Made by a program: the position numbers and the translations under genes. This document shows, one piece after another, positions 3,001 to 60,882 of a stretch of DNA of 64,000 nucleotides. Source of the stretch: Mobula hypostoma (taxonomy: Eukaryota). The stretch lies in NCBI RefSeq assembly GCF_963921235.1, contig NC_086112.1, positions 39,928,001 through 39,992,000 on the forward strand, written 5' to 3'. Under the pieces are notes generated by a model, which saw only the letters and a list, made by a program, of their open reading frames with translations, was not told where the DNA came from and made no database searches. The stretch's first letter is position 1. Each line of letters begins with the position of its first letter.

Positions 3001-4205
3001 TAGACCATTGGGCTGAACTGCCTTTTAACTTCCACTTATCATTGCAAATTACTGTATGAAAGAAACTGGCAGAGTTCAATGTGACTCATTTTTATAAAAT
3101 GTAAGCTTCTGCCAAGGAATTTGGAAGTCATTTCTTTGAAGTTAGGGGAAGAGGAAGAGAAAGCAAAAGAAACATTGACCCTGTTAACACACACACAATG
3201 CTGGAGGAACTTAGCAGGTCAGACAGCATCTATGGAAAAAGAGTACAGTTGACCCTTCATCAGGAGTTTTGTGAGTGTTGCTTGGATTTTCAGCATCTGC
3301 AGATTTTTCTTTTGTTTGTGATTGACCCTGATAATTTACTTGGGTGTAGGAAAGCGCTTGGGCATTTGCAGGATCAGTAGCAAGGGAATCTGAAGGAATT
3401 GCACTTGACCTATAGCTATATTGCATTTATACTGCAACCAACTTTTTCCAGCTAGGTTTCCTGAGGTGTAGTAAGCATGGTTCCATGTGTTGAATTTAAA
3501 AGTCATATTAAAATGGAGCCACACAGGCTCTTATTTGTTAACCCTGTGAGTGGAATGGTTGACTGCCTTTGTGAAAATGAAACATTGACCTGTGTTGTGC
3601 TTTGGGTCTAACCATCTGTTCTTAAACTTATAAGTTCACCCTAGCTTTGCCGAATTTTAGATTATTGTGGAGAAAAATGAATCACGTGGCATTTACTCAA
3701 TGGAAAGAAATGCTCAATCCAAGCAAGTTTTAAGAATATACAGGGTCCAGCATGCCCAGAGGTGCCAAGAGTGCCCAACTTGAAAATGAGTTCTTTAGTT
3801 CTCTGGATATGAGGAGCAGCTGTTAAGATAAGTGTTTAGCCTCTACTCCTTCTAATTTAGGTCTGTAGTAGGACACAATGAGATATGTTCTTCCTGAGGG
3901 GAGCAGGAGTTGGGCCTGCTTCGCATGGATCTTCCAGGTATGCATGTGGCTGGTACAAAAAGTGTGTTTGAGTTTACATTTGTTTTTCAGTTCATGCTGA
4001 TGAAGCAAGTGCAAAATTGTTCTTCTCTGGTCTCGAGCACTTTGTCAGGTATAAGCAGCTCCTTCCACTTGCCTCCTTTTGAAGCCTCTGTTCCTTTTGA
4101 TATCTTGATAAATCTTGCACTTTGTTCCTATTATTATTTAAATAGCGTCAAATCCCATATTGAGTTTGACACCCAATCACTCCTTTGATGTGCCATCGTG
4201 ATTTC

Positions 4206-9467: not shown

Positions 9468-10342
9468 ATTTTTTTTAATATAATTTTTATTAAATTTTCA
9501 AAAAGAATACATGAAAAGATAAAATCTACCCCCCTCCCCTTAACCCTCCCCCCCCCCATATATAGTCCTACCTAAAAGAAAGAAAGAAAAAAAAAAGAAC
9601 CGCCTGGGTGTTGGAAGGTTTCCACATGCTCCATGGGATTCAAAATAAATTTGGTATAATTATTCGTTACTTTCCCCAAGTAACCAAATTCTTTGTCGGA
9701 GCACTTAAATATGACATCCTATCTTTTGTAAATAAGGGCGCCAAAAATTCAAGAATGTTACATAATTATCTCTTAAATTATAAGTAATTTTTTCAAGTGG
9801 AATAGAACTAGCCATTTCATTATTCCAACGATCCATACTTAAATACGAATCAGATTTCCAAGTAACTGCTATAGTCTTCTTAGCTACTGCCAATGCAATT
9901 TTTATAAATTCTTTCTGATATTTATTCAATTTAAGTTTCGGTTTTATCCCTTCAATATCACCTAATAGAAATAATACAGGGTTATGTGGAAGTTGAATTC
10001 CAGTAATTTGTTCCAATAAGATTCTTAAATGTATCCAAAAAGGTTGAATTTTAAAACAAGACCAAGTAGAATGTAAAAAAGTACCAATTTCTTGATTACA
10101 CCGAAAACATTTATCAGATAGATTTGAGTTTAATCTATTTATTTTTTGTGGTGTAATATATAATTGGTGTAAAAAATTATATTGTACTAAGCTAAGTCGA
10201 ACATTTATTGTATTTGTCATACTGTCCAGACAAAGTCTTGACCAATTTATTTCATCAATATTAATATTCAGATCTGTTTCCCATTTTTGCTTTGACTTAT
10301 GGGTTCCTTGTTTAATTGTCTGTTCTTGAATCAATTGTTAAG
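9468..10342 (-). mobile_element. 5'-truncated L1/Tx1-clade LINE (ORF2 C-terminus, 3' UTR, A-rich tail)
   Basis: Uninterrupted 209-aa ORF 9705-10334 with CFRC...HSTWSC zinc knuckle; T-run at left end; TSD atcctatt (9460-9467, 10343-10350). Confidence 0.9.
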
Positions 10343-14348: not shown

Positions 14349-14570
14349 ACAAACACGAGAAAGTCTGCAGATGCTGGAAATCCAAGGCAAAGCACACAAT
14401 GTGCTGGAGGAACTCAGCAGGTCAGGCACCATCTCTGAAAATGAAAGTACCAGATTGTCGTTAACTACCATTTCCGATGAAGGATCTCGGCCCGAAACAT
14501 TGCCTGTTTATTCATTTCCATGGATGTCGCCTGACCTGCTGAGTTCCTCCAATACTTGGTGTGTTTTGCC
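14349..14570. mobile_element. Penelope-like terminal repeat, inverted pair
   Basis: gctggaggaactcagcaggtcaggc paired with gcctgacctgctgagttcctcca; degenerate hammerhead at ~14470-14505. Confidence 0.75.
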
Positions 14571-14854
14571 CTTATTTAAGGGGGAGTGCTGGTTTTCTCA
14601 GAATGACAAGAAAATTGATGTGCCAGTAATTGTGGCAGATGATACCTCAAGGCTAACAATGTAAGGCTGACAAAGATGTTCTGTTTAAACACACTTCTGC
14701 TGTTGCAGAAGCAGTGGTAACAGGTAGTCCAAAAGAAAAATCTTGCAGATATTTCAAATTCAATATGTAAAAAAAATAGCATGCTCGAAATGCTCTGACT
14801 GGGCAGTATCTGTGGAAAGAGAAACAAGTTTGTGTTTTTGGGCCAATGTTTCAG

Positions 14855-21160: not shown

Positions 21161-23513
21161 TTGTTATAAGTTAACTGCTTAGAAATATATTCCTTATGTT
21201 CAATTATTGCTCATTAATATTAAGCAGCTTTAGACTGGATATTGGAATGGGGGCATCGAGAGTGATATAAAAGTACACTTTAATCCTGGACTCTAATATT
21301 AAGTTCGAGGGATGGTGATAGCTGGATGGAGTGTGGAAGGAGGGATAGTTAGCTCATGGAGGGTAAATGCATGGAAAGGTGGGAGGATAAAGTGCAGAAA
21401 GGGACTTGGGTCAAGTGGGGATTGGTAGCCGAGGGAAGCCTTCAAGTCAGTAAGTCTTCAACAAATGATTGAGGCTGCAGAGAGGAGGACTGACAGAAGG
21501 TATGTCCGTTGGGTTGGAATTGAGGTAGAATATATAAATTGTAATAAAATAGGAGCAGAAGTAGGATATCCGGCCCTTTAGGTTTGCTCCACCATCATTC
21601 AAAATCTTGGCTGATCTATCTCAGTGCCACTCTCTAGCACTATCCTCCTACTCCATGAACACAATGACCAAGCTTCCACAAACATTTGTGGTAAAGAATT
21701 TCAATGGTTCATGATCTACTGACTGAAGAAATTTCTCCTGTCAGAGGAAATGTATCCCCTAGAGATAGCTTGCTGAGGCTGTCTAAATATTTTGTATTTT
21801 TGGATGCCCTTCTACAGAATACAGTCCAATTCCACTCGATTTTTCTGCTCTGTCCCTGGAACCAGAACATTAAAAAGTTATGCTGAACTGCTCCTGTGTT
21901 GCCTATACCCACTCTTGATCCCATTAGTAACTGAATCCTGCCATTCATACTTTCTGTGGCTAAAGGTTAAATCATTCTTTTGCAACAAGATTAAACCTGA
22001 GGCAGAGGCTGCATTTGTGATATTTGTATGAACTATCGGTTAATGAGAGAATTTATTGCCTGAAACCAAAGATGAGATTTATTGGTGGGTCTCTTAACTG
22101 AGTTAGAGTTACAGATTTATTATGTGCTCAAAATAGACATTGTTTATACAATATATGGAGAGTTGCTTCCTTAGACAATATGTTCAAAGCTCAAGAAGAA
22201 TGGTTCTGTTGGATAAACAAATATATTGAAGGTTGAAGCACATTTCGAAAAGTAAGTTCCAAAACAGTAACTAGGAGAAGTAGCAAGTTTGAAGAAACTA
22301 TTGAGAACATTTGTCAAATAACTGGTCACTTTTAAGTGGGATCACTTAAAGTTGAATGACGAAACATAGGAAATTAATATTCTGGGTTCATTTATCTCCT
22401 AGGCAGTGCATGTCAATTGTGAATTAAGAGTGAACGAATAGCAAGTTCCATTTTGTACTCAGATGTTTTTGCATTTGATATTTGCATGGCTGCGGATCCA
22501 TATTCAAAAGTAAGTTATTAGTAAGATTGATGATAGTAAAATTAGAAGAATAATTTGTCATTGTTTCCTAGAATGTTAAAGGAGGTTTTGCAGAAGTCTT
22601 AAGTTGTGTCAAGTAAAAGTAAATATTAAATGCCTGAAGTAAGGAGGTCATTGCCCTGGAGTGCTGATCAGTCCATCTGATCTTGTGTGCTAGCTTCTAT
22701 TCGTAACAATTTAGATAAAATTAGTAAGCACTTTGAACCATAGGCCAAAGTAGAAATTGGCAGCAGAAATTGATCTTAAAAATAGTTCTTGCTAATTTAG
22801 TTACAGTACTGGGATTGTTATTACAGTTAATATATACAATCTAGATGCTCAATAATATGCTGTTTAAAAGGATCATTGCAAAAGTTATTAGATAGAAGTA
22901 TTGATGTTGAAGTAACTGCTTCTATTTGAGAGGAGGTAAATAAGATAAACCTACTCTGTGTGTGATGCAAACAATTTGGGCAGTAGTTTCAGAGTGACAA
23001 ATGTTTTAATGAACTGCTCATAGATTCGGAATAGCTCATTGATCTGAGGTGGGTCAAGCAAGTTATTCAATTCTATAAATCTTAGGAAAATCTTTTGAGT
23101 TCTGATGAAGAGTTACCGGTCTGAAAGATTGACCGCTTTACTTTCCACAGATGCGGCTGAATTTGCCTTTATCCAGCATTTTCTGTTTTTAATCATATAA
23201 ATCTTCTGTTCATATGAGTAATGGATTTTAACTCTAAAGTTAAATGTCTGCAGTTTGGGCAACCGGACATTACATTGCTTGTAATACAGGTCGACATTCA
23301 CTAATCCGACTACCTGTAATCCTGTTCCTTCGATAATCCGCACTGATTTCAAATTTTCCGCGCAACTGTAATTTCAAATTTTTCGAGCCGCTGTACCAAT
23401 CTGCTGCGCAATGTGTTTTGGTTGCGCTAGATCTGTTCATGTGTTGGCGCACTCTTGTAAGCACCAGACAGGCGATTCCTGCTTGTTTTCCTGCATTTAT
23501 TGATATTATTTGC

Positions 23514-23679
23514 GTGAGGCGCGGCTGCCCGGCCCCCGCCAGCGGCGGGGGAGTTGGCGCGCGCTGGGTCGGTCTACTTCCTCGCCCGCCTGCGGGCATT
23601 CGCGCACTGCCCTCCGGCATCACCCGGCCGACGCTCCGTTCTCTTCTGCCTACGACCTCAGATCAGACATGGTGACCCA

Positions 23680-23721
<42 letters not shown>

Positions 23722-23747
23722 GAGGATTCCCTCAGTAACTGCGAGTG
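23514..23747 (+). pseudogene. Dispersed rDNA fragment: putative ITS2 3' part (23514-~23652) plus first ~95 nt of 28S rRNA (~23653-23747)
   Basis: CGACCTCAGATCAGAC...TGAATTTAAGCATAT...AGCGGAGGAAAAGAAACTAAC...GATTCCCTCAGTAAC is the conserved LSU 5' end. The upstream block is very GC/CpG-rich. Three CpG-type transitions relative to the recalled vertebrate 28S. Confidence 0.93.
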
Positions 23748-24020
23748 CAGTGTAGTCTTTGGGGTAACTGCAAGTCTGTGTCTTTGCTATTGTTTAGCTC
23801 ATGCTTGAGTGCTGGTAGTGGGTGCGCTTTATTTTTTGCCGGTGGGCAGGGGGGATTGTTGCTCGCTGCCGTGTACGTGGCAGGGGGGTGTAGCTTAGGG
23901 GTTCTAACTGTCGTTCACTCTTTGGGGCACTCCTCTGTTTTTATAGATGTTTGCGAAGAAAAAGCACTTCAGGATGTATATTGTATACATTTCTCTGACA
24001 TTAAATGAACCTTTGAATCC
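23748..24020 (+). mobile_element. 3' end of a retroelement with (ctttgaa)-type tail
   Basis: Aligns to the reverse complement of ~53150-53445. Confidence 0.85.
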
Positions 24021-24860
24021 TTTGCTATTTTAAAGGTATGATGAGGCAGTTAGCTATTGCTTAATGTGTTCTTTCTGTAATTCGGCATTTTCACTAATCC
24101 GGCACTCCTCAGGTCCCAATGGTGCCAGATTATAGAAGGTCGACCTGTACATACAAGCCATACTTGTCAACACTTTGGTAAATCAGACCACTAGGCTGTG
24201 CTCCCACTCTCTGCATACAAACAGAAGCTGAAATGGAAGAATTTAGAACAAATGAGCTTCTACGTTACTGCTTTGAGTCAGTAGACTAGTCTATGGTCAG
24301 AGACTCAGCTGCTGTCTAAGTGTGTGTGTCACTACCATCACAGACTTTATCGGCAGGTGTGTTGGGGACTGTGTAGCAAAGAGGACAATCTGGGTGGTTT
24401 CAGACTGGAAACCATGGATGAACTGGACCATTCACTCTCTTCTGAAGTTTAGAAGCAACCCTCAAATTTTATGTAAGACGTTTATAAGAAATCAAGAGGT
24501 CCAGTTGTCAGCTGTGGCAGGGTTTACATACTATAATGTGCTATGAAATGAAGTTGGGTGGCATTACTGACAACAGCACATCCCTTCCCGATGAGCACAA
24601 CACATTGTATGCATGTTTTGAGCAGAAGGGAATGGATATGTCGCAACACATCCTGACAGCCTCCATTGCACCTGAATCTACAGTCACCATCACAGACATA
24701 AGATTAGTCATCTGGAAGTGGTGTCGCTGGTCATGTCCTTGGATCCTGTGTGGATCAGCTGGCAGGAGTGTCTGCAGACATTTTTAACCTCTGCCTACTT
24801 CAGGCTGTGGTTCCCTCCTGATTTAAGAAAACCACTATCATCCCAGTACCCAAGAAGAAC

Positions 24861-25486
24861 AAGATTAGGTCATGAAGACACGCAGTCCTCTTTTATTGTC
24901 ATTTAGTAATGCATGCATTAAGAAATGATACAATATTTCCTCCGGTGTGATATCACAAAACACAGGACAGACCAAGACTGAAAAAAACTAACAAAACCAC
25001 ATAATTATAACATATAGTTACAACAGTGCAACAATACCATAACTTGATGAAGAAGTCCATGAGCACGGTAAAAGTTCAAAGTCTCTCAGATGTCCCACAT
25101 CTCACGCCAACGGGAGAAGGAAGAAAAACTCTCCCTGCCATACCCGACCACGGTCCGACTCTGAATCATCTGAAAACTTCAAGCGCTGATCAGCTCGCCG
25201 ACACTGAGTACTGAGCGCCACCTCTATCCGAACGATTCGACCTCCATCTCGGTCGCCAACAGCAGGCAAAGCCGGGGATTTTGAGGCCTTCCCTCCGAAA
25301 GATTCCCGACCGCGCAGTAACGACAGCAGCGAACGAGCTTTTCAGAAATTTTTCCAGATATTCCTCTGTGCTTTCACGTCCATCTCCATCAAATCAGAAT
25401 TGTCCAGGGCGCCTATTTAACGGATACGATATCATTTTTCACCGGAGGGCTGCGCACGCGCGGCGTGCTGCTCTCTCTCCTCCCGC
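24861..25486 (-). mobile_element. Young CpG-rich non-autonomous retroelement nested in Rex1
   Basis: Interrupts the PVPKKNK|..CL RT region; AATAAAA and aatctt-type tail on the minus strand; GC-rich 5' end. Confidence 0.6.
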
Positions 25487-26107
25487 TGACATGCCTTACT
25501 ACCATTCAATGGCGCTTACATTTACCATCATGAAATTCTTCGAGAGGCTGGACATAGCCACTCCAGCTTTCCATCAGCCATCTACCCTACCCTCTGTACA
25601 CTTGTGACTTCATGAACAAATTATGCTGGAACTATATTTACAAATTTGCAGATGATACCACTGTAATGGCCTGCATTTCAAATGGTGATGAGCCGGAATG
25701 CAGGAAGAAGATAGAGAGGTTAGAGATGTGGTTTCATGACAACAATCTTTCCCTCAATTCTTCAAAACAAAAAAGCTGGTCATTGATTTCAGGAATGGTG
25801 GGGTGGGGAGATGGAGGGTGGTGATCCTGACTATGTCAGCGTGTTGAGGCTGAGAGCTTCACCTGTCCTGGTTTAAACATTTTGATGTCACGGCCAGCAA
25901 AGCTCACCAACGTCTCTATTTCCTCAGGAGGCTAAAGAAATACAGTATGACCCCATCAACTCTTACCAGTTTTTGTTGATGCACCATAGAGCATTCTGTC
26001 TGGATGCATTGTAGCTGGTATGAAGATTGTTCTATGTGTGACTGCAAGACACTGCAGAGGTGTAGATACAGCTCAGCACATCATAGGAACCAACTTCCTC
26101 TCTATGC

Positions 26108-26843
26108 TAACACGAGGAAATCTGCAGATGCTGGAACTTCAAGCAACACACATAAAAGTTGCTGGTGAACGCAGCAGGTCAGGCAGCATCTCTAGGAAGA
26201 GGTACAGTCGACTTTCAAGCCGAGACCCTTCGTCAGGACTAACTGAAAGAAGAGTTAGTAAGAGATTTGAAAGTAGGAGGGGGAGAGGGAGATCCGAAAT
26301 GATAGGAGAAGACAGGAGGGGGAGGAATGGAGCCAAGAGCTGGACAATTTATTTGGCAAAAGGGAGAGGAAAGGGATATGCAGGTTGTTGGAGGAACAAC
26401 ACCTTATATTCCGTCAGCCTCCAACCTGATGGCATGAACATTGACTTCTCTAACTTCTGCTGATGCCCCACCTCCCCCTCGTACCCCATCTGTTATTTAT
26501 TTATTTACTTACATACACACTTCCTTTTTCTCGCTCTGTCCCTCTCACTATATCCCTTGCCCATCCTCTGGGCCTCCCCCCCTCCCCCTTTTCTTTCTCC
26601 CTAGGCCTCCCGTCCCATGATCCTCTCATATCCCTTTTGCCAACCACCTGTCCAGCTCTTGGCTCCATCCCTCCCCCTCCTGTCTTCTCCTATCATTTTG
26701 GATCTCCCCCTCCCACTTTCAAATCTCTTACTAGCTCTTCTTTCAGTTAGTCCTGACGAAGGGTCTCTGCCCGCAACGTCAACTGGACCTCTTCCTATAG
26801 ATGCTGCCTGGCCTGCTGTGTTCACCAGCAACTTTGATGCGTG
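26108..26843 (+). mobile_element. Penelope-like element: truncated 3' end with inverted terminal repeat
   Basis: 13-bp TSD ttcctctctatgc (26095-26107, 26844-26856); ~220-bp inverted arms; centre encodes the GIY-YIG C-terminus LEEQHLIFR..SLQPDGMNIDFSNFC*. Confidence 0.9.
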
Positions 26844-27756
26844 TTCCTCTCTATGCATTCCGTTTATATTTAATTGCTGCCTCATTATATAAGGAACTCC
26901 ACCTACTCCGGACATTCTGTCTTCTCCCACTTTTTCAAAGATAGTATAGCCTGAAAGCGTATGCCATCAAGTTCAAAGACAGCTTCTATTCCACTGATAT
27001 CAAACTCCTGAATGGACCGCTTGTATGATGAGATGGATTCTTGTCTACCTCGTTATGATCTTGCACTTTATCATTTACCTGCATTGAACTCTTTCAGTAA
27101 CTTTTACATTTTATTCTTCACTGTTGTTGTTTTACCTTATTCTAGCTCAGTGCACTGTGTAATGATTTGATCTACATATATAAGCAGTATGCAAGACAAC
27201 CTTTTCACTGTATTCTTGGTACCAATAGTTTCTTTTTTGTTGTAGATAATGGAAAAATTATATACCCAGAATAACGGTTTCAACAAAATAGTGGAACATC
27301 CATATATTGCGTAACTTACAGCAATGCAATTAACTGTACATCCTTTCTTAACTTCTTTTTATAGTTTTATTTGAAAGTTGAAGCCCCTCTCTAAAATCCA
27401 GCATTGGATTGTAATTATTTGACCATAATTGTGACATTGTGAGCTAAATCTGGATTCTATTTAGGGATGATCCAGTGAATTGTGGTTAATTGGGCAGCCA
27501 CTTATTTGGGACAGCTCTTAAAGAACAAAAACTAATCAAGAAATAGCTGGTATACGCTTTGTTTATTCGGGACATTATGCCACTTAATTGGGACAGAGAC
27601 TGTTGCTGAGCATTTCAAACTAGCATCAGTCGTGGGGCATTAGACATTACACCGTACTTAGCATGGATTGGTTTTAAATAATATAAACTGCACGCATTTA
27701 TGTTTAGAAATCAGTGATTTTTGTCACTGATAGTTGGTAAGAAATAGGGAGTAAGA

Positions 27757-28933: not shown

Positions 28934-29585
28934 CAAAGACGAGAAAATCTGCAGATCCTCAAAATCCAAGCAACACACTCAAAATGCTGGAGGAACTCAG
29001 CTGGCCAGGCAGCATCTATGGAAAAGAGTACAGTCAACGTTTCGGGCTGAGGCACCTTCATCAGGATTGGGAAAAAACATGAGAAGTTAGAGCAAGACGA
29101 TGGGAGGAGGGGAGGAAGAAGCACAAGGTGATAGGTGAAACTGGGGGAGGGAAAGGGATGAAGTAAAGAGCTGGGAAGCTGATGGGTGAAAGAGATAAAG
29201 GGCTGGAGAAAGGGAATCTGATTGGAGAGGGTGAAAGTCTATGGAAGAAAGGGAAGGGGGAGGAGCACCAGAGAGAGTTGATGGACAGGTAAGGAGATAA
29301 GGTGAGAGTGGGAAATGGGAATGGTGAAAGGGCGGTGGGGGGGGAGCGGGCAATTACTGGAAGTTCTGGAAATCGATGTTCATGCCATTAGGTTGGAGGC
29401 TACCCAGATGGAATATAAGGTGTTGCTCCTTCTACCTGAATGTGGCCTCATTGCAGCAGTAGAGGAGTCTATGGACTGACCGGTCCTGATGGAGTGTCTC
29501 AGCCCAAAACGTCAACTGTTTACTCTTTTCCATAGATCCTGCTTGGCCTGCTGAGTTCCTCCAGTATTTTGTGTGTGTTGCAAAT
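28934..29585 (-). mobile_element. Penelope-like element 3' end with inverted terminal repeat
   Basis: 11-bp TSD atatatttgct (28923-28933, 29586-29596); minus-strand EQHLIFHLGSLQPNGMNIDF; inverted arms. Confidence 0.9.
29031..29069 (-). ncRNA. Minimal type I hammerhead ribozyme motif (best-preserved copy)
   Basis: Reverse complement reads CAAUC-CUGAUGA-A-GGUGCCUCAGCCC-GAAAC-GUU-GACUG. Core is intact; helix I has one mismatch. Confidence 0.65.
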
Positions 29586-29753
29586 ATATATTTGCTTTCA
29601 TCTGTGCTTGAAGTTTTGTTCCTCTAAAGTATGCATTACTAAATTGTACATTATCATTACTACTGTCACTGTAATCTTGTATTGAGTATTCAATGACTAG
29701 TTAGTGCAATATAGTATTTAAAATTTTACATAAAACAAGATGCTGATTTGAAG

Positions 29754-32690: not shown

Positions 32691-35600
32691 TTATAGACTA
32701 CCCAGTAGTCCGTGGGATTGAGAGGAACAAACCTATAGAGAGACTGCAGACTCCTGCAAGAAACATAATGTTCTTTTAGTAGGTGATTTTAACTTTCCAC
32801 ATATTGGTTAGCCCTAGAAAAGGACTAGATGGGATAAAGTTTGTCAAATGTGTCCAGGAAAGTTTCCTTAGTAAGTCCGGAGAAGTCCGAATGAGAGAGA
32901 GTGTGTGATACTTGATCTCCTATTAGGGAATGAGATCGGGCAGGTAACAGTAGTTTGTGTAGGGGAACCATGATGTCATTGGCTTCAAATAAATATGGAA
33001 AAGAATTGGTCTGGTCTGCAGTCTGAGACTCTTAACTGGAGTGTGGACTGGGACAGGCTGTTTTCTGACAAAGGTGTACTTGGCAAGCGGAAGGCCTTCA
33101 AACGTGAAATTTTTGTGAGTACAAAGCTTGTATGTGCCTGTCTGCATAAAAGGTAAAGATAACAGGTTTAGAGAACCTTAGTTTTTGAGAGATATTGAGA
33201 CCCTGGTTAAGAAAGAAGAGGAGATATAGACAGGTGGGAGCAAGTTGGGTACTTGAGTATAAGAAATGAAAGAGAACTCTTAAATCAGGGCTAAAATCAG
33301 GGTGCTATAGCAGGCAAAGTGAAGGAGAATCCTAAGGGATTCTACAGATGTTACAAGCAGAAGGATTGTAAGGCACAAAATTGGTTCTCTGGAAGATCAG
33401 AATGGTCATCTGTGCCTGGAGCCAAAAGAGATGGGGGAAATCTTAAATGGATTTTTTGCATCTGTATTTACTTGGGAGTCCATAGAATTGAGGCAAAGCA
33501 GCAGTGAAGTCATGGATCCTATGCAGATTACAGAGGAGAAGGTGTTTGCTGTCTTGAGGCAAATTCAGGTGGATAAATCCCGAGGTCCTGACAATGTGCT
33601 CCCTTGGACCCTGTGGGAGGCAAATGCAGATATTGCAGGGGCCCTAGCAGATGTATTTAAATCATCCTTAGCGAGAGATGAGATGCCAGAGAATTACAGT
33701 ATAGCTAACGTTGCTCCACTATTTAAGAAAGTCTCTAACAGTAAACCAGGAAATTACAGGCTGGTGAGCCTGATGTCAATAGTGGGAAAGTTATTGGAAC
33801 GTATTCTAAGGGATTGTGGATATATGAGTATTTGGTTGGACATGGATTGATTAGGGAATTTCAGCATGGTTTTGTGCATGGTAGGTCTTATCCACGCAAT
33901 CTTAAAGTTTTTTTTTGAGTAAGTTACCAGGAAAGTTGATGAAGGCAAGGCAGTGGATGTTGTCTACATGGACTTTTTAGTAAGGTACTTGACAAGGCCC
34001 TGCATGGGAGGATGGTCAAAAAGGTTCAGTCACTTGGCATTCAAGATGAGCTGGTAACTTGGATTAGATATTAGCTTTGTCAGAGAGCCAGAGTGTTAGT
34101 AGGTGGTTGCCTCTCTGACTGGAGGCCTGTGACTAGTAGAGTGCCACAGGGATTGGTGCTGGGTCTGTTGTTGTTTGTCATTTATATCAATGACCTGGAT
34201 GCTGATGTGGTTACCTGGATCTTCAAAATTTGTGGATGACACCAAAATTGGGGGTGTAGTGGATAACAAAGGAGACAATCAGAGCTTGCAGTGGGATCAG
34301 GACCCGCTGGAAAAACGGGCTGCAAAATGGCATTTGGAATTTAATGCAGACTACTGTGAGGTGTTGCACTTTGGTAGAACCAGACAGTCCTTAATCAGTC
34401 CATAGAAGCTCAAACGAGATAATATGCGATACATAATAAATGGTAGGGCACTGGGGAATGCGATCTGGAAATACAGGTCCATAATCCATTGCATTTGACG
34501 GTGCACGTAGATGGGGTCATAAAGAAAGCTTTTGGCACATTGACCTTCATAAATGAATGTATTGAGTACAGAAGATGGGATGTTATGTTGAAGTTGTAAA
34601 AGACGTTAGCAAGACCTAATTTGGGGTATTGAGTGCAGTTTTGGTCACCTAACTCCAGGAAAGATGTAAATAAAGTTGAAAAGATACAGAGGAAATTTAC
34701 AAGGATGTTGCCCGGACTGGAGGACATGAGTTGTAAGGAAAGATTTCCATGTAGGTTGGGTGGGACTACAACCAGAGGTTATGGATTAAGGGTTAAAGGT
34801 GAAATGTTTAAGAGGAACATGAGGGGAATCTTCATCATTCAGAGGGTGGTGAGGGTGTGGAATGAGCTTCCAATGCAAGTGGTGCATACGAGCTCGATTT
34901 CAACACTTAAGAGAAGTTTGATTAGATACGTGGATGACAGGGGTATGGAGGGCTCTGTTCCTGGGTGCAGGTTGATGAGACTAGGCAGTTTAGATGGTTT
35001 GGTATGGACCAGATGGCTGAAGGGCCTGTTTCTGTGTTGTACTTTTCTATGACTCCGACTTTGTGACACTGAGGAATATGGATTGATGGAGTTTACAAGC
35101 TGGCTTCAGTGAATTGGTGGGATAGTTGGACTGCTTTAGAGAAGGAAATGGCCAAATAATATAGTTAAGATTAGGGGAGTATGACAACTTGGTGAAATGA
35201 AAATATGAATTGATGGGCTGTATTTTTTGATACATTTTGGGGGGGGGGAATACAGGATTGATTGCGGGAAATAAATGTAGTGGGTAGTGTTGGCTTAGTC
35301 TGCTGTATCGTAGAAAACAAAGAAGCCAGGAGGAACCAAGAAGGAAGAATCTGAGGAGTTGAGGCAACCAAGGAATGAGCAGCACAAAAGATGGCAGAAC
35401 ACAAATGAGGAAAAGGCGTCACTGATGTACTATGAGTTAGGGAGTAGTTTAAAAGGGACGAATTTCATATTTGATCTGGGGACTGGAGGGTGGAATGAGT
35501 GAATTTAGATTTGAAAATTTTCCATTGATGTATGCATTAATACCTGAGATATTAAGTGCATGAACAAGGAGCAGATTATAGTTTCCATATTCTGAATTGT

Positions 35601-48108: not shown

Positions 48109-49668
48109 TTTTTTTTAAATTTTATTTTTATTTGGATAAGGAATTCACAAATATCATGTACATTTTTCACACGTATAACCTTTTCCATTTTTTTATATGT
48201 ATAAAACTATAATTATTTATACATTCTTAAGTACACATTGAGATGATATAAAAGGAAATTAGACACTTAAATAGATAATTATGTACTGTGGTAATTCTAA
48301 TCTATTAGGCTAAGTAATGGTATTAGTTGTTAAGAAAAATAGTAATAATAGTTTCCATGTAACTCTTCTGGACCATTTCCACTGGTCCAAAATGTTGTAT
48401 CTAAGCCCATGTAACAACCATTGTAGGTGTTTATATCCTAATTTGTTCATGCTTGCTCCTGCCCGCAGACATAATTATCCAATCCCTATGTACTTATTTA
48501 CTTAATTTTTTCATTTTTTATCCCTTTCCCAAATCTTTCCCTTTACTTGTGTTAATTCTCTGTTTTCCAAAAGAAAACAAAAAAAAAGACATTTAGACTA
48601 GGAGTGCTTACGTTAGCAATATTACTGTGTTGATGAGAAGAGCAGTATAAATCATTAGGAGAGTCATCTAAAGTCTGCTCGCATTGAGGTTATATATTCA
48701 ATCCATTTATTCCAGATTTGATAAAATTTTTCTTTTTGAACTCTCAGGGAGTAAGTCAACTTTTCCATTTTAAATATTTCCAAGATAATTTCGTGCCAAT
48801 CTTCTAATGTAGGTGGTATTGGATTTAGCCACTTTCTAGTGATTGATTTCTTACTTGCCGCTAAGAGGGCCTGCAGCAACTTTAGATCTTCCTTCTGTTC
48901 AAGAAACAATACATGCCCCAAATAGAGCGTCTCAAAGTTCAGAGGTATCTGGGACCTAAGTACCTTAACTAATGTTCTATGAATACCTTCCCAATATAGA
49001 CTTAATTTAGGGCAATCCCAGAAAATATGAAAATGATTTGCCTCCTTGGAGCCGCACCTTCTCCAACATGTCACGTTTGTATCTTTATATTTTTCCTGAT
49101 ATGGGGTCTTGAAGTATCTTATAATGTTTTTCCAACAATGTTCTCTCCAAGTCAAAGAATTAGTCGAGGACCATTGAAAGCTGCAGATTTTCCCCCAAGC
49201 CTCCTCTGAAAGTACCAACCCCGCTTCTTTCTCCCACTTCTCTTTAATATACAGTGTATTTACATTTTTAGCATGGGAGAGTGCATTATATAATCGAGAA
49301 ACTGATTTACTAGGTATTGAACTGCAAGCCGAATTCAGAATCTTGAAAAATTCTAATTCTACTGTTGATAGGTCTATATATCTACAACTCTGGTTAACAT
49401 AGTTTCGTACTTGAAGGTACCTAAAAAAAGTTGTTGTGTTCTAGGCCATGTTTGTCCTGCAGGATTTGGAAACTTTGTAATACTCTTTTATCTATAAATG
49501 AGAGGTAGGTTGTAAGACCTTTCTTTATCCATAGCTCAAATCTTTTATCTCCTCTGTTGGGAAGGAATTCGGTATCATATGCACACCATCTAAAGAGTTT
49601 TAACATGTTATTAATTCCACATGAATTAACCACCTTCTGCCATACTTTTAATGTAAGATTTATCCAAC
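48109..49668 (-). mobile_element. 5'-truncated L1/Tx1-clade LINE
   Basis: ORF2 C-terminal frames (49421-49668, 48664-49218) with CWRRC...HFHIFWDC; poly-T at left; similar flanks tggcctttct / tggccctttct. Confidence 0.9.
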
Positions 49669-53146: not shown

Positions 53147-53962
53147 TTCAAAAGTTTCAAAGGTACATTTAATGTCAGAGAAATGTATACAATATACATC
53201 CTGAAATTCTTTTTCTTCACAAATATCCACGAAAACAGAGTGCCCCAAAGAATGAATGACGGTTAAGTGTTAGAAACCCAAAGTCCCCCCCCCAGTTCTC
53301 TCCATCCACACGTAAGCAGCAGCAAAGCAATGACCCCCCCTCCCTCATCAGCAAAAAATCATTGGCACCCCCCCCAACCGAGCACTCAAGCGTGTAGCAA
53401 AGCATCCATATAGGCACAGACTTGCAGTACCCCAAAGACTACTCGTTCACCCAGTAATTCGACATACCAGCAAGAGAAAAAGGGTTGTCCCTGTTTCACA
53501 GCGAGAGGGGAGACATAACAAACAGCTCGCTGATTTATGATGTTAAAAGTCTGTTGTGTCACTTCTTCCCAGTTCTGTGCCCAAAGAACTCAGGTCTCTG
53601 GACACACAGCCAGCAGCCAGCTTGCTGCTTTCGATCTTCCGTCTCCCACAACACCAGTTTCCTGCAGCGGCGCCGACCTTGATTCTGCCCACCTCCAGAG
53701 CCCCAAAATCCCAGAACCTCGAAGGCACGCTAGTCTTCTAGGCTGCGTCCTTGGCATATCGAATAGCGGCCAGTCGTGAGACCCGGAGAGGGTCCCATTC
53801 CAGCAAAGAACCGAAGTCAGCATGTAACTCTGGGTCAGGGTCTTCAAAAAAAGCCCTGAAAGGGAAAAATAGAGATATTAAAGTTAGAAATATAGCTGTT
53901 TCTGAAAATGCAAGCAAAGGAGTTGCCATAAGGTGCCCTCGTTCTCCTAAGCTCCTCCTCCT
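53147..53962 (-). mobile_element. Non-autonomous retroelement with (tttgaa)-type tail; same family as 23748-24020
   Basis: Internal homology within this window; CpG-rich 5' half; no recognisable protein. Confidence 0.7.
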
Positions 53963-55079: not shown

Positions 55080-55213
55080 CATAAAGAGATTTCTGCAGAT
55101 GCCGAAAATCTAGCGTAACACACACAAAATGCTGGTTGAACTCAGCAGGTTGGACAGCATCTATGGAGAGGAATAAAGAGCCGACATTTTGGGCTGAGAC
55201 CCTTCATCGGGAA
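55080..55213 (-). mobile_element. Penelope-like terminal repeat fragment
   Basis: Same family as 28934-29070; degenerate hammerhead core. Similar fragments at ~1410-1540, 2700-2885, 3186-3315, 23100-23180 and 43935-44015. Confidence 0.75.
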
Positions 55214-56160: not shown

Positions 56161-57750
56161 CAGTGTATTCATTCCCTCCCCCCTTGGATATTTTCATCTT
56201 TTATTGGTTTCACAGTGGATTCAATTTGGCTTTTTTGACACTGATCAACAGGAAAAAGACTGTAGTGTCAAAGTGAAAACATCTGTACAAAGTGATCTAA
56301 GTTAATTACAACTGTAAAACACAAAATAATTGATTGCGTAAGTATTCACCTCCTTCAAATCTGTATTTAGTAGATACACCTTTGGCAGCAATAACAGACT
56401 TAATTCTGTGTGGATTCTGCTTTGCACATCTGGACACTGCAATTTTTCCCCATTCTTCTTTACAAAACTGCTGAAGCTCTGTCAGATTTCATGGGGATCA
56501 TGAGAGAACAGTCCTCTTCAAGTCCAGCCACAAATTCTCAATTGGATTGAAGTCTAGACTCTGACTTGACCACCCCAGGACATTAACTTTGTTTCTAAGC
56601 CATTCCTGTGTAGCTTTGGCTATATGCTTGGGGTCATTGTCTTGCTAGAAAACAATTCATTTCCCAAGTCGCAGTTCTCTTGCAGAGTGCACCAGGTTTT
56701 CCTCTAGGATTTCCCTGTATTTTACTGCATTTGTTTTACCCTCTACCTTCACAAGCCTTCCAGGACCTGTTGCAGTGAAGCATCCCCACAGCATGATGCA
56801 GCCACCACAATGCTTCATGGTAGAGATGGTTTGTTTTTGATGATGTGCGGTGTTGGGCTTATGCCAAAGATAGCATTTAGTCTGATGGCCAAAAAGCTCA
56901 ATTTTGGTTTCATCAGGTCATAGAACATTCTTCTCGTAGACTTCAGAGTTGTCCACATGCCTTTGGATAAACTCCATTCAAGACTTCGTGAGCTTTTTGC
57001 AACAGCAGCTTTCTTTTTGCCACTCTGTCATAAAGCTGTTGACTGGTGAAGTAACCGGGCAGCAGTTGTTGTATGCACAGTCTCTCCCATCTCAGCCACT
57101 GAATCTTGTAACTCATCTTGGTGGCCTCTCTCACTAGTTCCCTTCTTGCATGGTCACTCAGTTTTTGAGGACAGCCTGCTCAAGGCAGAGTTATAGCTGT
57201 GCCATATTATTTTCATTTCTTGACTGATTTAACTGTACCCCAAGGGATATTCAGTGACTTGGAAATTTTCTTGTCTCCATCTCCTGACTTGTGCTTTTCA
57301 ATAACTTTTTTGTGGAGTTGGTTGGAGTATTCTTTTGTCTTCATGGTGTAGTTTTTGCCAGAATACTGACTCACCAGCAGTTGGACCTTCCAGATACAGG
57401 TGTATTTTTACTACAATCAGTTAAAACATCTTGACTGCACACAGGTCTCAAAAAACAGATCTCCATTTAACTAATTATGTGATTTTGAAAACTAATTGGC
57501 TGCACCAGTGATGATTTGGTGTATCATATTAAAGGGGATGAATACTTAAGCAATCAATTAATTTCTGTTTTATTTTTGTAATTAATTTAGATCACTTTGT
57601 AGTAAAGTGATCTGTTTTCATTTTGACACGAGTCTTTTTCAGTTGATCAGTGTCAAAAAAGCCAAATTAAATCCACAGTAATTAAATGTTGTAAAATAAT
57701 AAAACTTGAAAACTTCCAAGGGGGGCTGAATACTTTTGTTATAGGCACTG
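56161..57750 (-). mobile_element. Full-length degenerate Tc1-family IR/DR transposon, Passport-like
   Basis: TA|CAGTG...CACTG|TA; ~200-bp inverted repeats; 1590 bp long. Confidence 0.93.
56360..57344 (-). pseudogene. Tc1 DD34E-type transposase pseudogene
   Basis: MKTKEYSNQLHKKVIEKHKSG...; DETKIELFG; SIMLWGCF; QDNDPKH; LQSN*EFV in place of the usual LNPIENLW owing to a frameshift; ...GVSTKY. Contains stops and frameshifts. Confidence 0.9.
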
Positions 57751-59537
57751 TAAATGCTGCCAGTGGAAGATGCTTGAAGGACTGTACAATTTCCACCTAT
57801 GCTTGTTCCTTATGTTACATCAAATACTTTGCAGTTCATATGTAAATCTTGGATTATGTTAGAGTTCAAAGTGGCATTGTGTGGACTGAAATACAGATAT
57901 GGTTAACTTGGCAGTATGCCTTCAACAAATGGACAAATGATGAGCAGCTATGGAGCTGAATCCATGACCTTTGGACTGGAGGTCAGAAAGCACTGTATGC
58001 ACTAATAGTCATTTCTCAGCACATGAACAGAAACTTGATACTGTAGGGGAGAATCTTTATGATTAATAAAAAGGAATCACAAGTTGTTTGTCTTTGGCAT
58101 GATACTGGATGGATTTCCATTGGGCTTGACAGCTTTATAGTTACATTTGACTATTATTTTGGTTTATTAATTGACTATTAATCTGGGTGTGTGTTATTCT
58201 TAAGTGAGGCAGTCTATTTTTATGGGCATATATATGAATTGTTTTGTAGCTTCTGCGGATTTTTTTGGTGACGATATTAGAATGTTGCTCTCTTTGGGAG
58301 TTCAGGAATGATGATGAATCAATACTATCTCTGCCTCATGATCTCTGAAAATGATCTTTTCTCAGTTGAGGGAATAAACTAGCTTTGGAGAATGAAAATA
58401 TAGAAAGATATTGTCACCCCCTGCTGTGCCTGCTTTTTCTTTTCTAGCATGTGCTTTTGGTTTTGTTTTCAACCCGTCCCATGACTCTAAATTCCCTAAT
58501 GTGGATATAAATTGCAAAGTTATTGACAGGTATAGACTAATAATACAAGCTCTGACAGTTTGAGAATTCAAATTCATTTTTGCTTTAAATCTGGAAATAA
58601 GATGGCATCAGCTGAGAAAATAGATTATAAGATAGAAGATTGATACAGGAAAAACCCATCTGGTTGATTGAGATACTTAGAAGAGATCACTTGCCATTTT
58701 TGTCTATTCTGTTCTCTGTGTGACTTCAGTGCCACATAAATATGATTTGTAATTTTAAGTGTTCTCCGGTGGCTTGGTAATCCACTCAGTCACATTAAGT
58801 TGTATATCCATCCTCTCAGGGCAACTGGAGATGGGCAATAAATGACAAACTGGCCACATCCTAAAATGTGGGATGGCTGCAGAATTGATTGCTTAAAAAT
58901 TAGATCACATCATGCCACATCATATTTTTCTGCAGAAAGTGACCTCATTTTGAAAGCCAAACCCGAATGAAAGTCACATTGTGGAATATCATATCTGTAA
59001 GCATGATTCTCGGCTGTCCTGTCTGCCTCCTATTGTAATGTGGCATCAGTTATATATAATAAACATTCAGCTATCTCTTCGAAGATTTTTGTTTTGTTTT
59101 GGAGTTTCCAGGCCATTCCTAGAGAATCTAGGTTTTCTATCATGAGTAGAAATGAAGGGTCTCAACCCAAAACGTCGACTTCCTATTCCCCTCCACAAAT
59201 GTTGTCGGAGGCACAAAGTTCTCCTCCTTCACTTTCTTGTGCTTTCTATTATAAGGCCTGCTCTTGCATTGCAAAAGATAAATTTTTCCAGTTCAGTCTT
59301 GGTTCAGCAACGTGGAGTTTCCTTTAAGGCTTTTTAAGTGTCTGCTCTCTTGATCTTCCCCCTCGCCCTCCCCTCTTGATCCCTTTCTGTTCCACCTATT
59401 AATGTAGTCACAATCTTTAACACTGGGCTTATCTCCCCGCCTTCAGTTTTGACAGACAAGATTCCACAATGAAGGGAGTCATTGTCATGTTGTACAGCTG
59501 GTGTTAGATATGCCTGTATAACTGCCAATGAATTTCT

Positions 59538-59935
59538 AGACAACACACACAAAATGCTGCAGGAGCTCAGCAGATCAGATAGCATCTGTGGAAGTGAATC
59601 ACCATTTGAGGTTTTGGGCTGAGATGTTTCATTAGGGATGGAAAGGGAGGGGAAATACACTAGAATAAAAGGGTGGGGGAGTGGAAGAGGGTCAAGCGAG
59701 AAGGTGATAGGTGATGCCAAGTGGATAGAAAGGCAAGGGGCTAGAGAAGAAGGAATCTAATAGGAGAGAAGACTGGACCATGGGAGAAAAAGAAGGAAGG
59801 GTACCAAAGGGAGGTGATAGGCACCTCCAGGTGTTTATTGGTTTCCACAGATGCTGCCTGACCTGCTGAGTTTCTCCAACATTTTGTGTGTGTTGCTCTG
59901 GGTTATCAGCATCTGCAGAATCTCTTGTGTTTGTG
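59538..59935. mobile_element. Penelope-like inverted terminal-repeat element
   Basis: caacacacacaaaatgctg arm paired with cattttgtgtgtgttg arm around a purine-rich core; another fragment at ~59145-59240. Confidence 0.75.
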
Positions 59936-60882
59936 AATTTGTAGACAAACTGAAAAGAGCTCAAGTCAGAAAATACCTTCATTGGTATTTTTCATTTTAG
60001 CTAAGGGCCATGAATAGAAAGCTGGGATGGATGAAGCTATACTTACATCAAGTAACTAGAAGAATTTGGGTTCTAAAAGTACTTGCTTAATAGACTTGAA
60101 TAGAAAGAAAGTTATAATAAATGTTCGAGACTTTCATTCACAGCTGGAGTATATTGTCTAAGTTTAGTAACTGTATTACATCAAGTCAATGTCAAATTAT
60201 TTATTTTCTGCAAATATTCAGTCAATGATCATCAAGGTAACATATGTGCAGATTTTCTTAACTTTTGTGATGTCCTGATTTGCAAGCGTATGTCAGTTAT
60301 ACTCAGACCTTCCATTCTGGTTAATTTCATGTTTTGTGGTACCGCTTGCCCAATGTTCTGCCCACCAGTGGTTGTGTCTGAGAACTTCTAGCCACTATGA
60401 GTTACTGTCAGCTAGCTAGAAGCAAATGGTCCAATTCCAGATTAAAGAAGTCACCACTTAAGGGACAAACTGTGAACCGCCCCTAGCATATCCTTGAGTG
60501 TGTTAGTTGAAGCAATATATTTCATTAGATGTTTCCATGTACATGTGATAAATAAGTCTGAATTTTGAACTTTGAAATGGAGTAACTGCACATTTGGACC
60601 AGAGCTGTAAGCATCTGTGAACAGCAGTCCTCATGCACTGAGCAGGACTTCATAAGCTCCTTAGTATCTTGGTCAATTCCCAAGTCAAGCAAGTCACTGC
60701 CAGTCCCTGTAACTACAGCCATGGTATGAAGAATTCCGCATGGGCATCCTTGTGTATGCACATGCGGGATACTTTAGAATTCGTCACTTTATGACCCCCA
60801 TTTCAAGCACCCAACCCCAAACATCAGCTCATGATATCTTTTCTAGAACATATGAAAGTTTCAATATCCCTGTCTGCTGCAT

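What the first reader, a model, noticed from the sequence alone, without database searches (positions are those of the whole stretch)
23514..24020. Chimeric retrocopy: pre-rRNA (putative ITS2 + 28S 5' end) fused to a retroelement 3' tail
Seen: ~140 nt of GC-rich sequence runs directly into the 28S 5' end, which stops after ~95 nt (GCGAGTG). It then joins the 3' ~270 nt of a retroelement whose longer, rRNA-free copy sits at 53147-53962. That copy reads GTGAACGAGTAGTC at the junction position, similar to the recalled 28S continuation GTGAA, so there is possible microhomology. The unit is bracketed by tttgc (23509-23513, 24021-24025), a weak TSD. Known: LINE template switching onto cellular RNAs makes U6- and rRNA-LINE chimeras in mammals. 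Inference: the RT switched onto a precursor rRNA still carrying ITS2, so position 23514 might record an ITS2 processing intermediate. If multi-copy, this would be an rDNA-headed SINE-like family distinct from 5S-derived SINE3 and 28S-3'-derived SINE28.
Basis: partly seen in the sequence, partly recalled or inferred. Interest (0 to 1): 0.78.

Follow-up and report, generated by a model that had tools for sequence, protein, structure and literature searches.

The report
Pre-rRNA piece fused to retroposon tail
A 0.5-kb insert in a ray genome joins a piece of ribosomal RNA precursor (spacer plus the start of 28S) to the tail of a repeated element; it is most likely a one-off, dead by-product of reverse transcription, which is a known kind of accident.

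Summary
Window 23652-23747 is the exact 5' end of eukaryotic 28S rRNA (Rfam LSU, 63.5 bits, E 4e-14). It is preceded without a break by 138 nt of 75% G+C, CpG-rich spacer-like sequence. From about 23748-23755 it continues as about 275 nt that align only to 53149-53442(-), at 76% identity.

- **Junction:** it lies in a 5-8 nt microhomology (28S GTGAAGAG, tail GTGAACGAG).
- **Host element:** the unit sits inside a TA-flanked inverted-repeat element, and nothing like the second copy's upstream sequence lies 5' of the head. The head therefore replaces the missing part of the tail element and did not insert into it.

- The 'tttgc' duplication is at chance level.
- The tail's retroelement identity is inferred (no poly(A), conserved terminal hairpin, uneven conservation). 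No RT-bearing parent was found.
- ITS2 identity could not be tested, because no ray rDNA was reachable.

The head has no Pol III promoter boxes, and T-runs lie inside the unit, which argues against a classical SINE.

Best reading: a single chimeric retrocopy made by template switching onto pre-rRNA. This scan holds four unread first-reader notes with near-identical titles on other pieces of this genome, so copy number stays open. Interest is modest.

The parts
23285..24149 (.). Host TIR element (Tc1/mariner-like MITE) that carries the chimera: TA|CAGGTCGAC... at the left end, ...GTCGACCTG|TA at the right end
   Evidence: The inverted repeat 23274-23306 / 24128-24161 is 82% over 34 nt. The TA dinucleotides and CAGGTCGAC termini were read directly. 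No other copy lies in the window, so no empty site is available.
23514..23651 (+). ITS2-like spacer, directly contiguous with the 28S 5' terminus
   Evidence: 75.4% G+C, 20 CpG, o/e 1.03. It is contiguous with the 28S start. No 5.8S match at E<=1. Identity with the species' ITS2 was not testable.
23652..23747 (+). 28S rRNA 5' end (about positions 1-96; Rfam alignment runs on to 23755)
   Evidence: LSU_rRNA_eukarya model 24-103 on 23676-23755, 63.5 bits, E 3.7e-14. Agrees with rDNA contig L001. There are three CpG-to-TpG/CpA changes against the conserved sequence.
23745..23755 (+). Junction zone with microhomology between 28S (GTGAAGAG) and tail (GTGAACGAG)
   Evidence: Direct comparison. The exact crossover cannot be placed within these 8-11 nt.
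23748..24024 (+). 3' tail of a repeated, poly(A)-less element (retroposon-like)
   Evidence: Aligns to 53442-53149(-), E 3e-48. Identity is about 94% in the first 35 nt, 40-70% in the middle and 85-95% in the last 120 nt. There is no A-run at the 3' end.
23972..24005 (+). Conserved terminal hairpin (ATGTATA-ttg-TATACAT) followed by ATTAAA, inside a 44-nt block identical in both copies
   Evidence: Alignments. The hairpin is predicted in both copies, although the whole 85-nt fold is not better than shuffles.
53149..53442 (-). Second, rRNA-free copy of the tail
   Evidence: blastn, nhmmer E 5e-102.
53443..53962 (-). Sequence upstream of the second tail copy. Its nature and 5' limit are unknown.
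   Evidence: No similarity to the rRNA head. No Pfam or Rfam match. The 63-aa ORF has only 3 weak repetitive hits among 1.8 billion representatives. G+C falls at about 53855, next to a polypyrimidine-AG motif.

Best explanation
The unit 23514-24024 is a genuine one-piece chimeric insertion. It was most likely made in a single target-primed reverse transcription event and was dead on arrival.

Proposed steps (all inferred):
1. A reverse transcriptase of a poly(A)-less, 'stringent' non-LTR retrotransposon recognises the 3' hairpin and tail of its own RNA. It started at the tail's 3' end, inside a TA-flanked TIR element.
2. It copied about 275 nt.
3. At a short microhomology (GTGAA..GAG) it switched onto a nucleolar precursor rRNA, at about position 96-103 of 28S.
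4. It copied back through the 28S 5' end and 138 nt into ITS2, then stopped.

Shown here: the anatomy, the orientation, the microhomology, the absence of any upstream tail-element sequence 5' of the head, and the absence of poly(A). Inferred: that the tail is a retroelement tail, that the template was RNA and not rDNA, and that the GC-rich stretch is this species' ITS2.
For: - The exact 28S 5' end sits at 23652-23747/55 (E 3.7e-14).
- A GC-rich, CpG-intact stretch is contiguous with it.
- The tail is homologous to a second copy up to the same 3' terminus, with no poly(A).
- Conservation is strongly uneven. A 44-nt block at the 3' end, including a hairpin, is identical while the middle is 40-70% identical. 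At a uniform 25% divergence, the chance of that identical run at a given position is about 3e-6 (my arithmetic). This is what constrained 3' ends of diverged retroposon subfamilies look like, and not what neutral decay of a parent-daughter pair gives.
- The junction shows microhomology.
- The host element's left arm does not resemble the sequence upstream of copy 2, so the head replaces the missing 5' part.
- Both arms of one TIR element flank the unit, which argues for a real insertion and against misassembly.
- Sense-oriented 28S/LINE-1 chimeras are documented in mammals and are attributed to template switching or RNA ligation (PMC13174262).
- Notes from this scan report other RNA-retroelement chimeras in the same genome (unchecked).
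Against: - No RT-bearing parent of the tail was found, and there are only two tail copies in 64 kb.
- The TSDs are at chance level.
- ITS2 identity is untested.
- The switch enters 28S at an internal position, not at an RNA 3' end as in U6/L1 chimeras.
- Mature 28S vastly outnumbers pre-rRNA (background knowledge). The ITS2 part therefore fits an rDNA (DNA) template or a Pol I co-transcript equally well.
- The first 35 nt of the tail are about 94% conserved. This hints that the tail may be a discrete unit whose 5' end coincides with the junction, and not an arbitrary truncation point.
- Four similar first-reader notes on other pieces of this genome may mean that it is not a one-off.
Confidence: 0.5

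Rival explanations
1. It is one member of a multi-copy set. This could be (a) an rDNA-headed SINE-like retroposon family, or (b) a single ancient chimera later multiplied as cargo of its TIR host element or by segmental duplication.
For: This scan holds four first-reader notes with near-identical titles on other pieces of the same genome (s1-143868, s1-143635, s1-144044, s1-144516), with lengths of 528, 843, 507 and 536 letters. Two of them describe the same nesting seen here ('inside a DNA-transposon shell'; 'nested in a MITE, nested in a LINE'). That favours (b), or a duplicated or re-read locus, over independent retrotransposition.
Against: - The notes are unchecked and their sequences could not be read. 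One has exactly this finding's length (507).
- There is only one head and no second host-element copy in this window.
- The head has no A box, B box or 5S box C, even allowing 2 mismatches. T6 and T5 runs inside the unit would stop Pol III.
- ORFs spanning the junction or the tail have no relatives in the protein collection. This is weak evidence, because ray non-coding ORFs are probably not in that collection.
Confidence: 0.2
2. It is a 5' transduction, not template switching. In this reading the ~275-nt tail is a complete short non-autonomous element. A source copy sits inside a 28S gene at about position 96-103, is co-transcribed by Pol I with the pre-rRNA, and was retro-copied with a 5'-truncated stretch of upstream ITS2-28S.
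For: - Homology between the two tail copies starts at the same point in both, and its first 35 nt are about 94% identical while the middle is 40-70%. This is as expected if that point is a functional 5' end.
- A Pol I co-transcript explains the ITS2 part naturally.
- The sequence upstream of copy 2 is unrelated and unidentifiable, so it could be another transduced flank.
Against: - With two copies, the shared start of homology follows simply from the chimera's truncation point.
- No rDNA-resident copy is known.
- To my knowledge, no site-specific element is described at this 28S position. The rDNA-TE review was searched by keyword only.
Confidence: 0.1
3. It is a DNA-level patchwork. A 235-bp rDNA fragment (ITS2-28S) was captured as filler at the 5' junction of a 5'-truncated retroposon insertion, or at a later break there, by microhomology-mediated end joining or templated repair. 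No pre-rRNA was involved.
For: Spacer plus gene is exactly what rDNA itself contains. The junction shows microhomology. No TSD can be demonstrated.
Against: The head is in sense orientation, and its join falls exactly at the tail's truncation point. This is the pattern of RT-made chimeras (PMC13174262). One locus cannot separate an RNA template from a DNA template.
Confidence: 0.1
4. The 'tail' is not a retroelement. In this reading 53147-53855(-) is the terminal exon and 3' UTR of a host gene, and the chimera is rRNA joined to a copy of that mRNA's 3' end.
For: - A polypyrimidine tract plus CAG lies at 53856-53870(-).
- G+C steps up exactly there.
- A short open frame ends at 53741.
- ATTAAA lies about 20 nt before the end of homology in both copies.
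Against: - Neither copy has poly(A).
- The 63-aa frame has no credible homologue among 1.8 billion representatives and no Pfam match.
- 25% divergence with large indels and a perfectly conserved 3' block does not fit a parent-daughter pair, given that the head is only about 3-4% diverged from conserved 28S.
Confidence: 0.07
5. It is an assembly chimera: rDNA reads were mis-joined to a repeat.
For: rDNA and repeats are classic sources of misassembly. No read data are available here.
Against: The unit is neatly nested between the two arms of one TIR element. The 28S part carries CpG-decay substitutions, which are not expected in active rDNA reads.
Confidence: 0.03

Closest known systems
28S rRNA/LINE-1 and U6/LINE-1 chimeric insertions of mammals (template switching or RNA ligation during TPRT; PMC13174262 and the earlier work of Buzdin and colleagues, the latter from my own knowledge)
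   Same: A cellular non-coding RNA segment is fused in sense orientation to the 5' end of a 5'-truncated retroelement 3' part. The result is a single insert that is non-functional on arrival.
   Different: The tail here has no poly(A), so it is not L1-type. The RNA part includes 138 nt of apparent ITS2, so it is a precursor and not mature rRNA; that paper does not mention ITS2 or pre-rRNA. The join lies at an internal 28S position near the 5' end, whereas the mammalian 28S segments mostly start near position 3636. The host is a ray.
SINE28 (mammalian SINE derived from 28S rRNA; PMC4994717) and 5S-derived SINE3
   Same: An rRNA-derived 5' part is joined to a retroelement-related 3' part.
   Different: Those are multi-copy families. 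Here only one copy was seen, no promoter boxes were found, internal T-runs are present, and the head is the 28S 5' end plus spacer.
R2-type rDNA-resident elements co-transcribed with pre-rRNA, and their short internally deleted derivatives (from my own knowledge)
   Same: They would give RNA molecules in which 28S sequence is directly followed by element sequence.
   Different: R2 inserts far downstream in 28S and removes the upstream rRNA with a ribozyme. No ribozyme or any other Rfam family was found in the tail. This copy lies outside rDNA.
Pre-tRNA-Tyr/Penelope-tail chimera reported by this scan in the same genome (s1-142370)
   Same: An unprocessed nuclear RNA precursor is joined head-to-tail to a retroelement 3' tail. 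It was judged a one-off by-product.
   Different: The RNA, the tail and the locus are all different. That report was not checked here.

Membership tests
RT-made bipartite chimeric retrocopy (cellular RNA + retroelement 3' part) | Two unrelated transcribed sequences are joined in the same orientation, with the cellular RNA on the 5' side | tested here: met
   28S sense strand at 23652-23755, directly followed by the tail in the orientation of its 3' terminus.
RT-made bipartite chimeric retrocopy (cellular RNA + retroelement 3' part) | The 3' part is the 5'-truncated 3' end of a retrotransposon, reaching that element's own 3' terminus | tested here: inconclusive
   Both copies end at the same point, with a conserved hairpin and no poly(A). 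No RT-encoding parent and no third copy were found.
RT-made bipartite chimeric retrocopy (cellular RNA + retroelement 3' part) | One pair of target-site duplications flanks the whole chimera | tested here: inconclusive
   The best flanking repeat is 8 nt with 1 mismatch, and 115/300 shuffles do as well. No empty host-element copy is available in the window.
RT-made bipartite chimeric retrocopy (cellular RNA + retroelement 3' part) | No sequence of the element's missing 5' part lies on the far side of the cellular RNA (so this is not an insertion into an element) | tested here: met
   23240-23513 has no similarity to 53443-53962. The head has none either.
L1-type chimera (U6/L1, 28S/L1) | Poly(A) tail at the 3' end | tested here: not met
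   No run of five or more A between 23990 and 24080. The sequence after the tail is ctttgctattttaaagg.
SINE (rRNA-headed: SINE3 or SINE28 type) | Many dispersed copies with independent flanks | not testable with these tools
   There is one head in 64 kb and the genome cannot be searched. Four unread scan notes with the same title lie on other pieces.
SINE (rRNA-headed: SINE3 or SINE28 type) | Internal Pol III promoter in the head, and no internal terminator | tested here: not met
   No A box, B box or 5S box C at up to 2 mismatches in 23514-23800. T6 at 23832 and T5 at 23938.
Pre-rRNA origin of the head (ITS2 + 28S) | 23514-23651 is colinear with the species' own ITS2 3' end | not testable with these tools
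   No ray rDNA was reachable. Metagenome scans found nothing, and protein-level hits were rDNA of other eukaryotes with unrelated spacers. The only support is contiguity with the exact 28S 5' end and the composition.

The most novel reading that the evidence does not exclude
The locus is one of several (five or more already noted by this scan) copies of a previously undescribed repeat in a ray. Its head is unprocessed pre-rRNA (ITS2 3' end plus the first ~100 nt of 28S) and its body is a ~275-nt retroposon tail. It would have spread either by retrotransposition, perhaps from an rDNA-resident, Pol I co-transcribed source, or as cargo of a Tc1/mariner-type MITE. If its copies share a 5' end, that end would mark an ITS2 processing site.
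Probability: 0.17. Interest if true: 0.62.

Novelty: new member of a known kind. Interest (0 to 1): 0.3.

Why it matters
If it is a one-off, it adds a non-mammalian, non-L1 example to the catalogue of rRNA-retroelement chimeras. It would also show that a poly(A)-less retroposon machinery in a cartilaginous fish can pick up a nucleolar precursor RNA. That hints that reverse transcription, or its RNP, meets pre-rRNA in or near the nucleolus. This is a small point about mechanism and has no consequence for the host.

It would matter more if the other similar loci noted in this genome prove to be independent copies. That would be a new way of building a mobile element, with a Pol I transcript as head, and a natural record of an ITS2 processing intermediate.

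Tried and rejected
**Searches that found nothing or were uninformative**
- Rfam at gathering threshold on the whole window found nothing. The 28S piece appears only in the E-value mode.
- No other Rfam family (hammerhead, HDV, 5.8S) is present in the unit or in copy 2.
- The frame ending at 53741 was tested as a host terminal exon or a LINE ORF2 C-terminus. phmmer against 1.84 billion representatives gave 3 weak multi-stretch hits. Pfam gave none.
- Exact 26-mers of the tail hairpin and of the spacer/28S boundary were scanned in metagenome contigs: 0 hits each.
- An exact look-up of four ORFs spanning the junctions found none in the collection. My references omitted the start codon and kept the stop, so this result is uninformative. 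I did not retype the sequences.
- A word-based protein search with the junction-spanning ORF hit only rDNA-derived ORFs of other eukaryotes, covering the 28S part alone.
- The same search with the tail ORF gave no hit.
- The search of earlier findings by sequence or by relatives was blank.

**Ideas rejected**
- The sequence upstream of copy 2 is not a decayed 28S head. Local alignment scored no better than shuffles (134/500 and 364/500).
- Neither copy has a demonstrable TSD.

**Other**
- No stretch of N occurs in the window.
- Nothing here was taken for human sequence.

Full report
**What is there**

Reading 23300-24250 shows a sharp change at 23514, from AT-rich sequence to a GC-rich block. 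That block runs without a break into ...ctacgacctcagatcagac..., the canonical start of 28S rRNA.

Rfam at gathering threshold reports nothing in the window. In E-value mode on 23000-24500 it gives one hit: LSU_rRNA_eukarya, model positions 24-103, on 23676-23755, plus strand, 63.5 bits, E 3.7e-14. Model position 1 then falls at about 23653. No 5.8S or any other family appears.

An independent eukaryotic rDNA contig, fetched by way of a protein hit (L001), has the same boundary (..TACGA|CCTCAGATCAG..). It reads on as GCGAGCGAAGAGGGAAGAGCCC, where the window reads GCGAGTGCAGTGTAGTCTTTGGGG. The 28S homology therefore stops after about 96-103 nt.

The 28S part carries three CpG-to-TpG/CpA changes at otherwise conserved positions (ACGTGGCG to ACATGGTG, CCCGCT to CCCACT). 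It is thus a decaying copy and not active rDNA.

The 138 nt before it (23514-23651) are 75.4% G+C with CpG o/e 1.03, against 0.29 for the window.

**The tail**

From 23752 to 24024 the sequence aligns to 53442-53149 on the minus strand: 75.7% identity over 300 columns, E 3e-48. blastn and an nhmmer profile of the pair find no third copy in the 64 kb.

The similarity is very uneven:
- about 94% in the first 35 nt;
- 40-70%, with indels of 11 and 7 nt, in the middle;
- 85-95% in the last 120 nt.

The last 120 nt include a 44-nt identical block. It holds a small hairpin (ATGTATA-ttg-TATACAT, predicted in both copies) followed by ATTAAA.

Under uniform 25% divergence, a run of 44 identities at a given position has a probability of about 3e-6 (my arithmetic). 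The two copies are therefore not a parent-daughter pair that decayed neutrally. They are members of diverged lineages with constrained ends.

Neither copy has poly(A). Both end at the same point (..CCTTTGAA[T/A]C[C/T]TTTG). This is the look of the 3' tail of a 'stringent' non-LTR retroposon (L2/CR1/RTE-like, in which the RT recognises a 3' hairpin). That statement is inference: no RT-bearing parent was found.

**The junction**

Conserved 28S continues GTGAAGAG. Tail copy 2 reads GTGAACGAG at the corresponding place. The chimera reads GTGCAGTG. The crossover can be anywhere in 23745-23755, so there is a 5-8 nt microhomology.

**The context**

The unit lies inside an element with 33-34 nt terminal inverted repeats (23274-23306 against 24161-24128, 82%). 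Its inner termini read TA|CAGGTCGAC... and ...GTCGACCTG|TA. That is Tc1/mariner-like (classification from my own knowledge).

The left arm of this element (23240-23513) has no similarity to the 520 nt that precede the second tail copy, and the head has none either. The rRNA head therefore sits exactly where the missing 5' part of the tail element would be. It did not insert into a longer tail copy. This favours a single joining event. The nesting between two arms of one element also argues against an assembly chimera.

**What does not hold**

- The proposed TSD (tttgc) is not distinguishable from chance. The best flanking direct repeat is 8 nt with one mismatch, matched or beaten in 115 of 300 shuffles.
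- For the second copy the best is 10 nt with one mismatch, 36 of 300.
G+C drops at about 53855, next to a polypyrimidine-CAG motif.

That motif, a short open frame ending at 53741, and the ATTAAA about 20 nt before the end made me test whether 'copy 2' is really a host gene's terminal exon. The 63-aa frame has only three weak, multi-stretch hits among 1.84 billion representative proteins. It has no Pfam match and the region has no Rfam match. Together with the missing poly(A) and the uneven divergence, this makes the host-exon reading unlikely, though it is not excluded.

**Is it a SINE-like family?**

The head has no A box, B box or 5S box C, even with two mismatches. The unit contains T6 and T5 runs that would stop Pol III. 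Only one head is in this window.

Protein-space searches with ORFs spanning the junction or the tail found no other copy. These collections probably do not hold non-coding ORFs of a ray genome, so the blank says little. One search was also uninformative because of how I framed the references.

On the other side, this scan's notebook lists four first-reader notes with almost the same title on other pieces of the same genome (s1-143868, s1-143635, s1-144044, s1-144516). I could not read their sequences. One has exactly this finding's length (507). Two describe the same nesting (DNA-transposon shell; MITE within a LINE).

A LINE does lie just downstream of the host element here. One search printed RT-like frames at 24277-25976; I recognised them by eye and ran no family search on them.

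If those loci are truly distinct, the shared nesting points to amplification of one old chimera, as cargo of the TIR element or by segmental duplication or duplicated assembly. It does not point to repeated retrotransposition. This remains open and is the main uncertainty in the novelty score.

**Mechanism**

My best reading (about 0.5):
1. Target-primed reverse transcription begins on the tail RNA.
2. After about 275 nt the nascent cDNA pairs through GTGAA..GAG with 28S sequence in a precursor rRNA that still carries ITS2.
3. The RT copies through the 28S 5' end and 138 nt of spacer, then stops. It stops either because the RNA ends there or because of the very GC-rich template. The stretch is predicted to fold at -63.7 kcal/mol, which is no better than shuffles of the same composition.

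Rivals:
- a multi-copy set (0.2);
- 5' transduction from a short element resident in a 28S gene and co-transcribed by Pol I (0.1; the conserved first 35 nt of the tail are the hint);
- capture of an rDNA DNA fragment during repair of the 5' junction (0.1);
- a host mRNA 3' UTR as the tail (0.07);
- misassembly (0.03).

**Comparison with what is known**

Sense-oriented 28S rRNA/LINE-1 chimeras were recently catalogued in mammals: n = 18, median 269 nt, mostly from around position 3636 of 28S, attributed to template switching or RNA ligation (PMC13174262). That paper does not mention ITS2 or pre-rRNA.

SINE28 and the 5S-derived SINEs are rRNA-headed families. A literature search for ITS2-containing chimeric retrocopies found no precedent.

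The present case is therefore the same kind of accident, with three differences: a poly(A)-less tail, a precursor (spacer-containing) template, and a cartilaginous-fish host. The genome is a ray according to an earlier follow-up note (not checked by me).

**Verdict**

I class it as a new member of a known kind, with interest about 0.3. Interest would rise if the other noted loci prove to be independent copies.

Noticed in passing
window 3175-3241, 14378-14578, 26135-26848, 28961-29590, 55091-55212, 59531-59939: An abundant foldback or hairpin repeat with the core ..ACACAAAATGCTGGAGGAACTCAGCAGGTCAGGCAGCATCTATGGA.. It has at least six copies, several of them as close inverted pairs. It looks like a very common MITE- or SINE-like family of this genome.
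   Followed up: no
window 53741-53870 (-): A polypyrimidine tract plus CAG, a G+C step, a 38-codon open frame ending in a stop, then about 590 nt ending in ATTAAA. It mimics a terminal exon with a 3' UTR, yet has no detectable protein relatives.
   Followed up: partly
window 9705-10334 (-) and 48664-49218 (-): Two ORFs of 209 and 184 aa that resemble each other and look like the cysteine-rich C-terminal part of L1/Tx1-type ORF2. This was judged by eye only.
   Followed up: no
window 24277-25976 (+) and 33431-35052 (+): Decayed CR1/L2-like LINE reverse-transcriptase frames (FADDTTV motif at about 25600-25650). The first lies directly downstream of the host TIR element and is itself interrupted at about 24880-25200. 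Judged by eye only.
   Followed up: no
window 56657-57374 (-): Tc1-type transposase remnants (..CIMLWGCF.. and an N-terminal HTH-like frame), flanked by the inverted repeat 56286-56358 / 57529-57601.
   Followed up: no
window 23346-23395: Two tandem 25-nt units (ATTTCAAATTTTCCGCGCAACTGTA, 84% alike) in the left arm of the host TIR element. That arm also keeps an unusually high CpG o/e of 1.11.
   Followed up: no
L001 (marine metagenome contig, ENA ERZ908015): A 7.6-kb eukaryotic rDNA contig on which gene callers placed several ORFs. 'Proteins' such as P0008 are translations of ITS2/28S. Many hits are likely the same artefact.
   Followed up: partly
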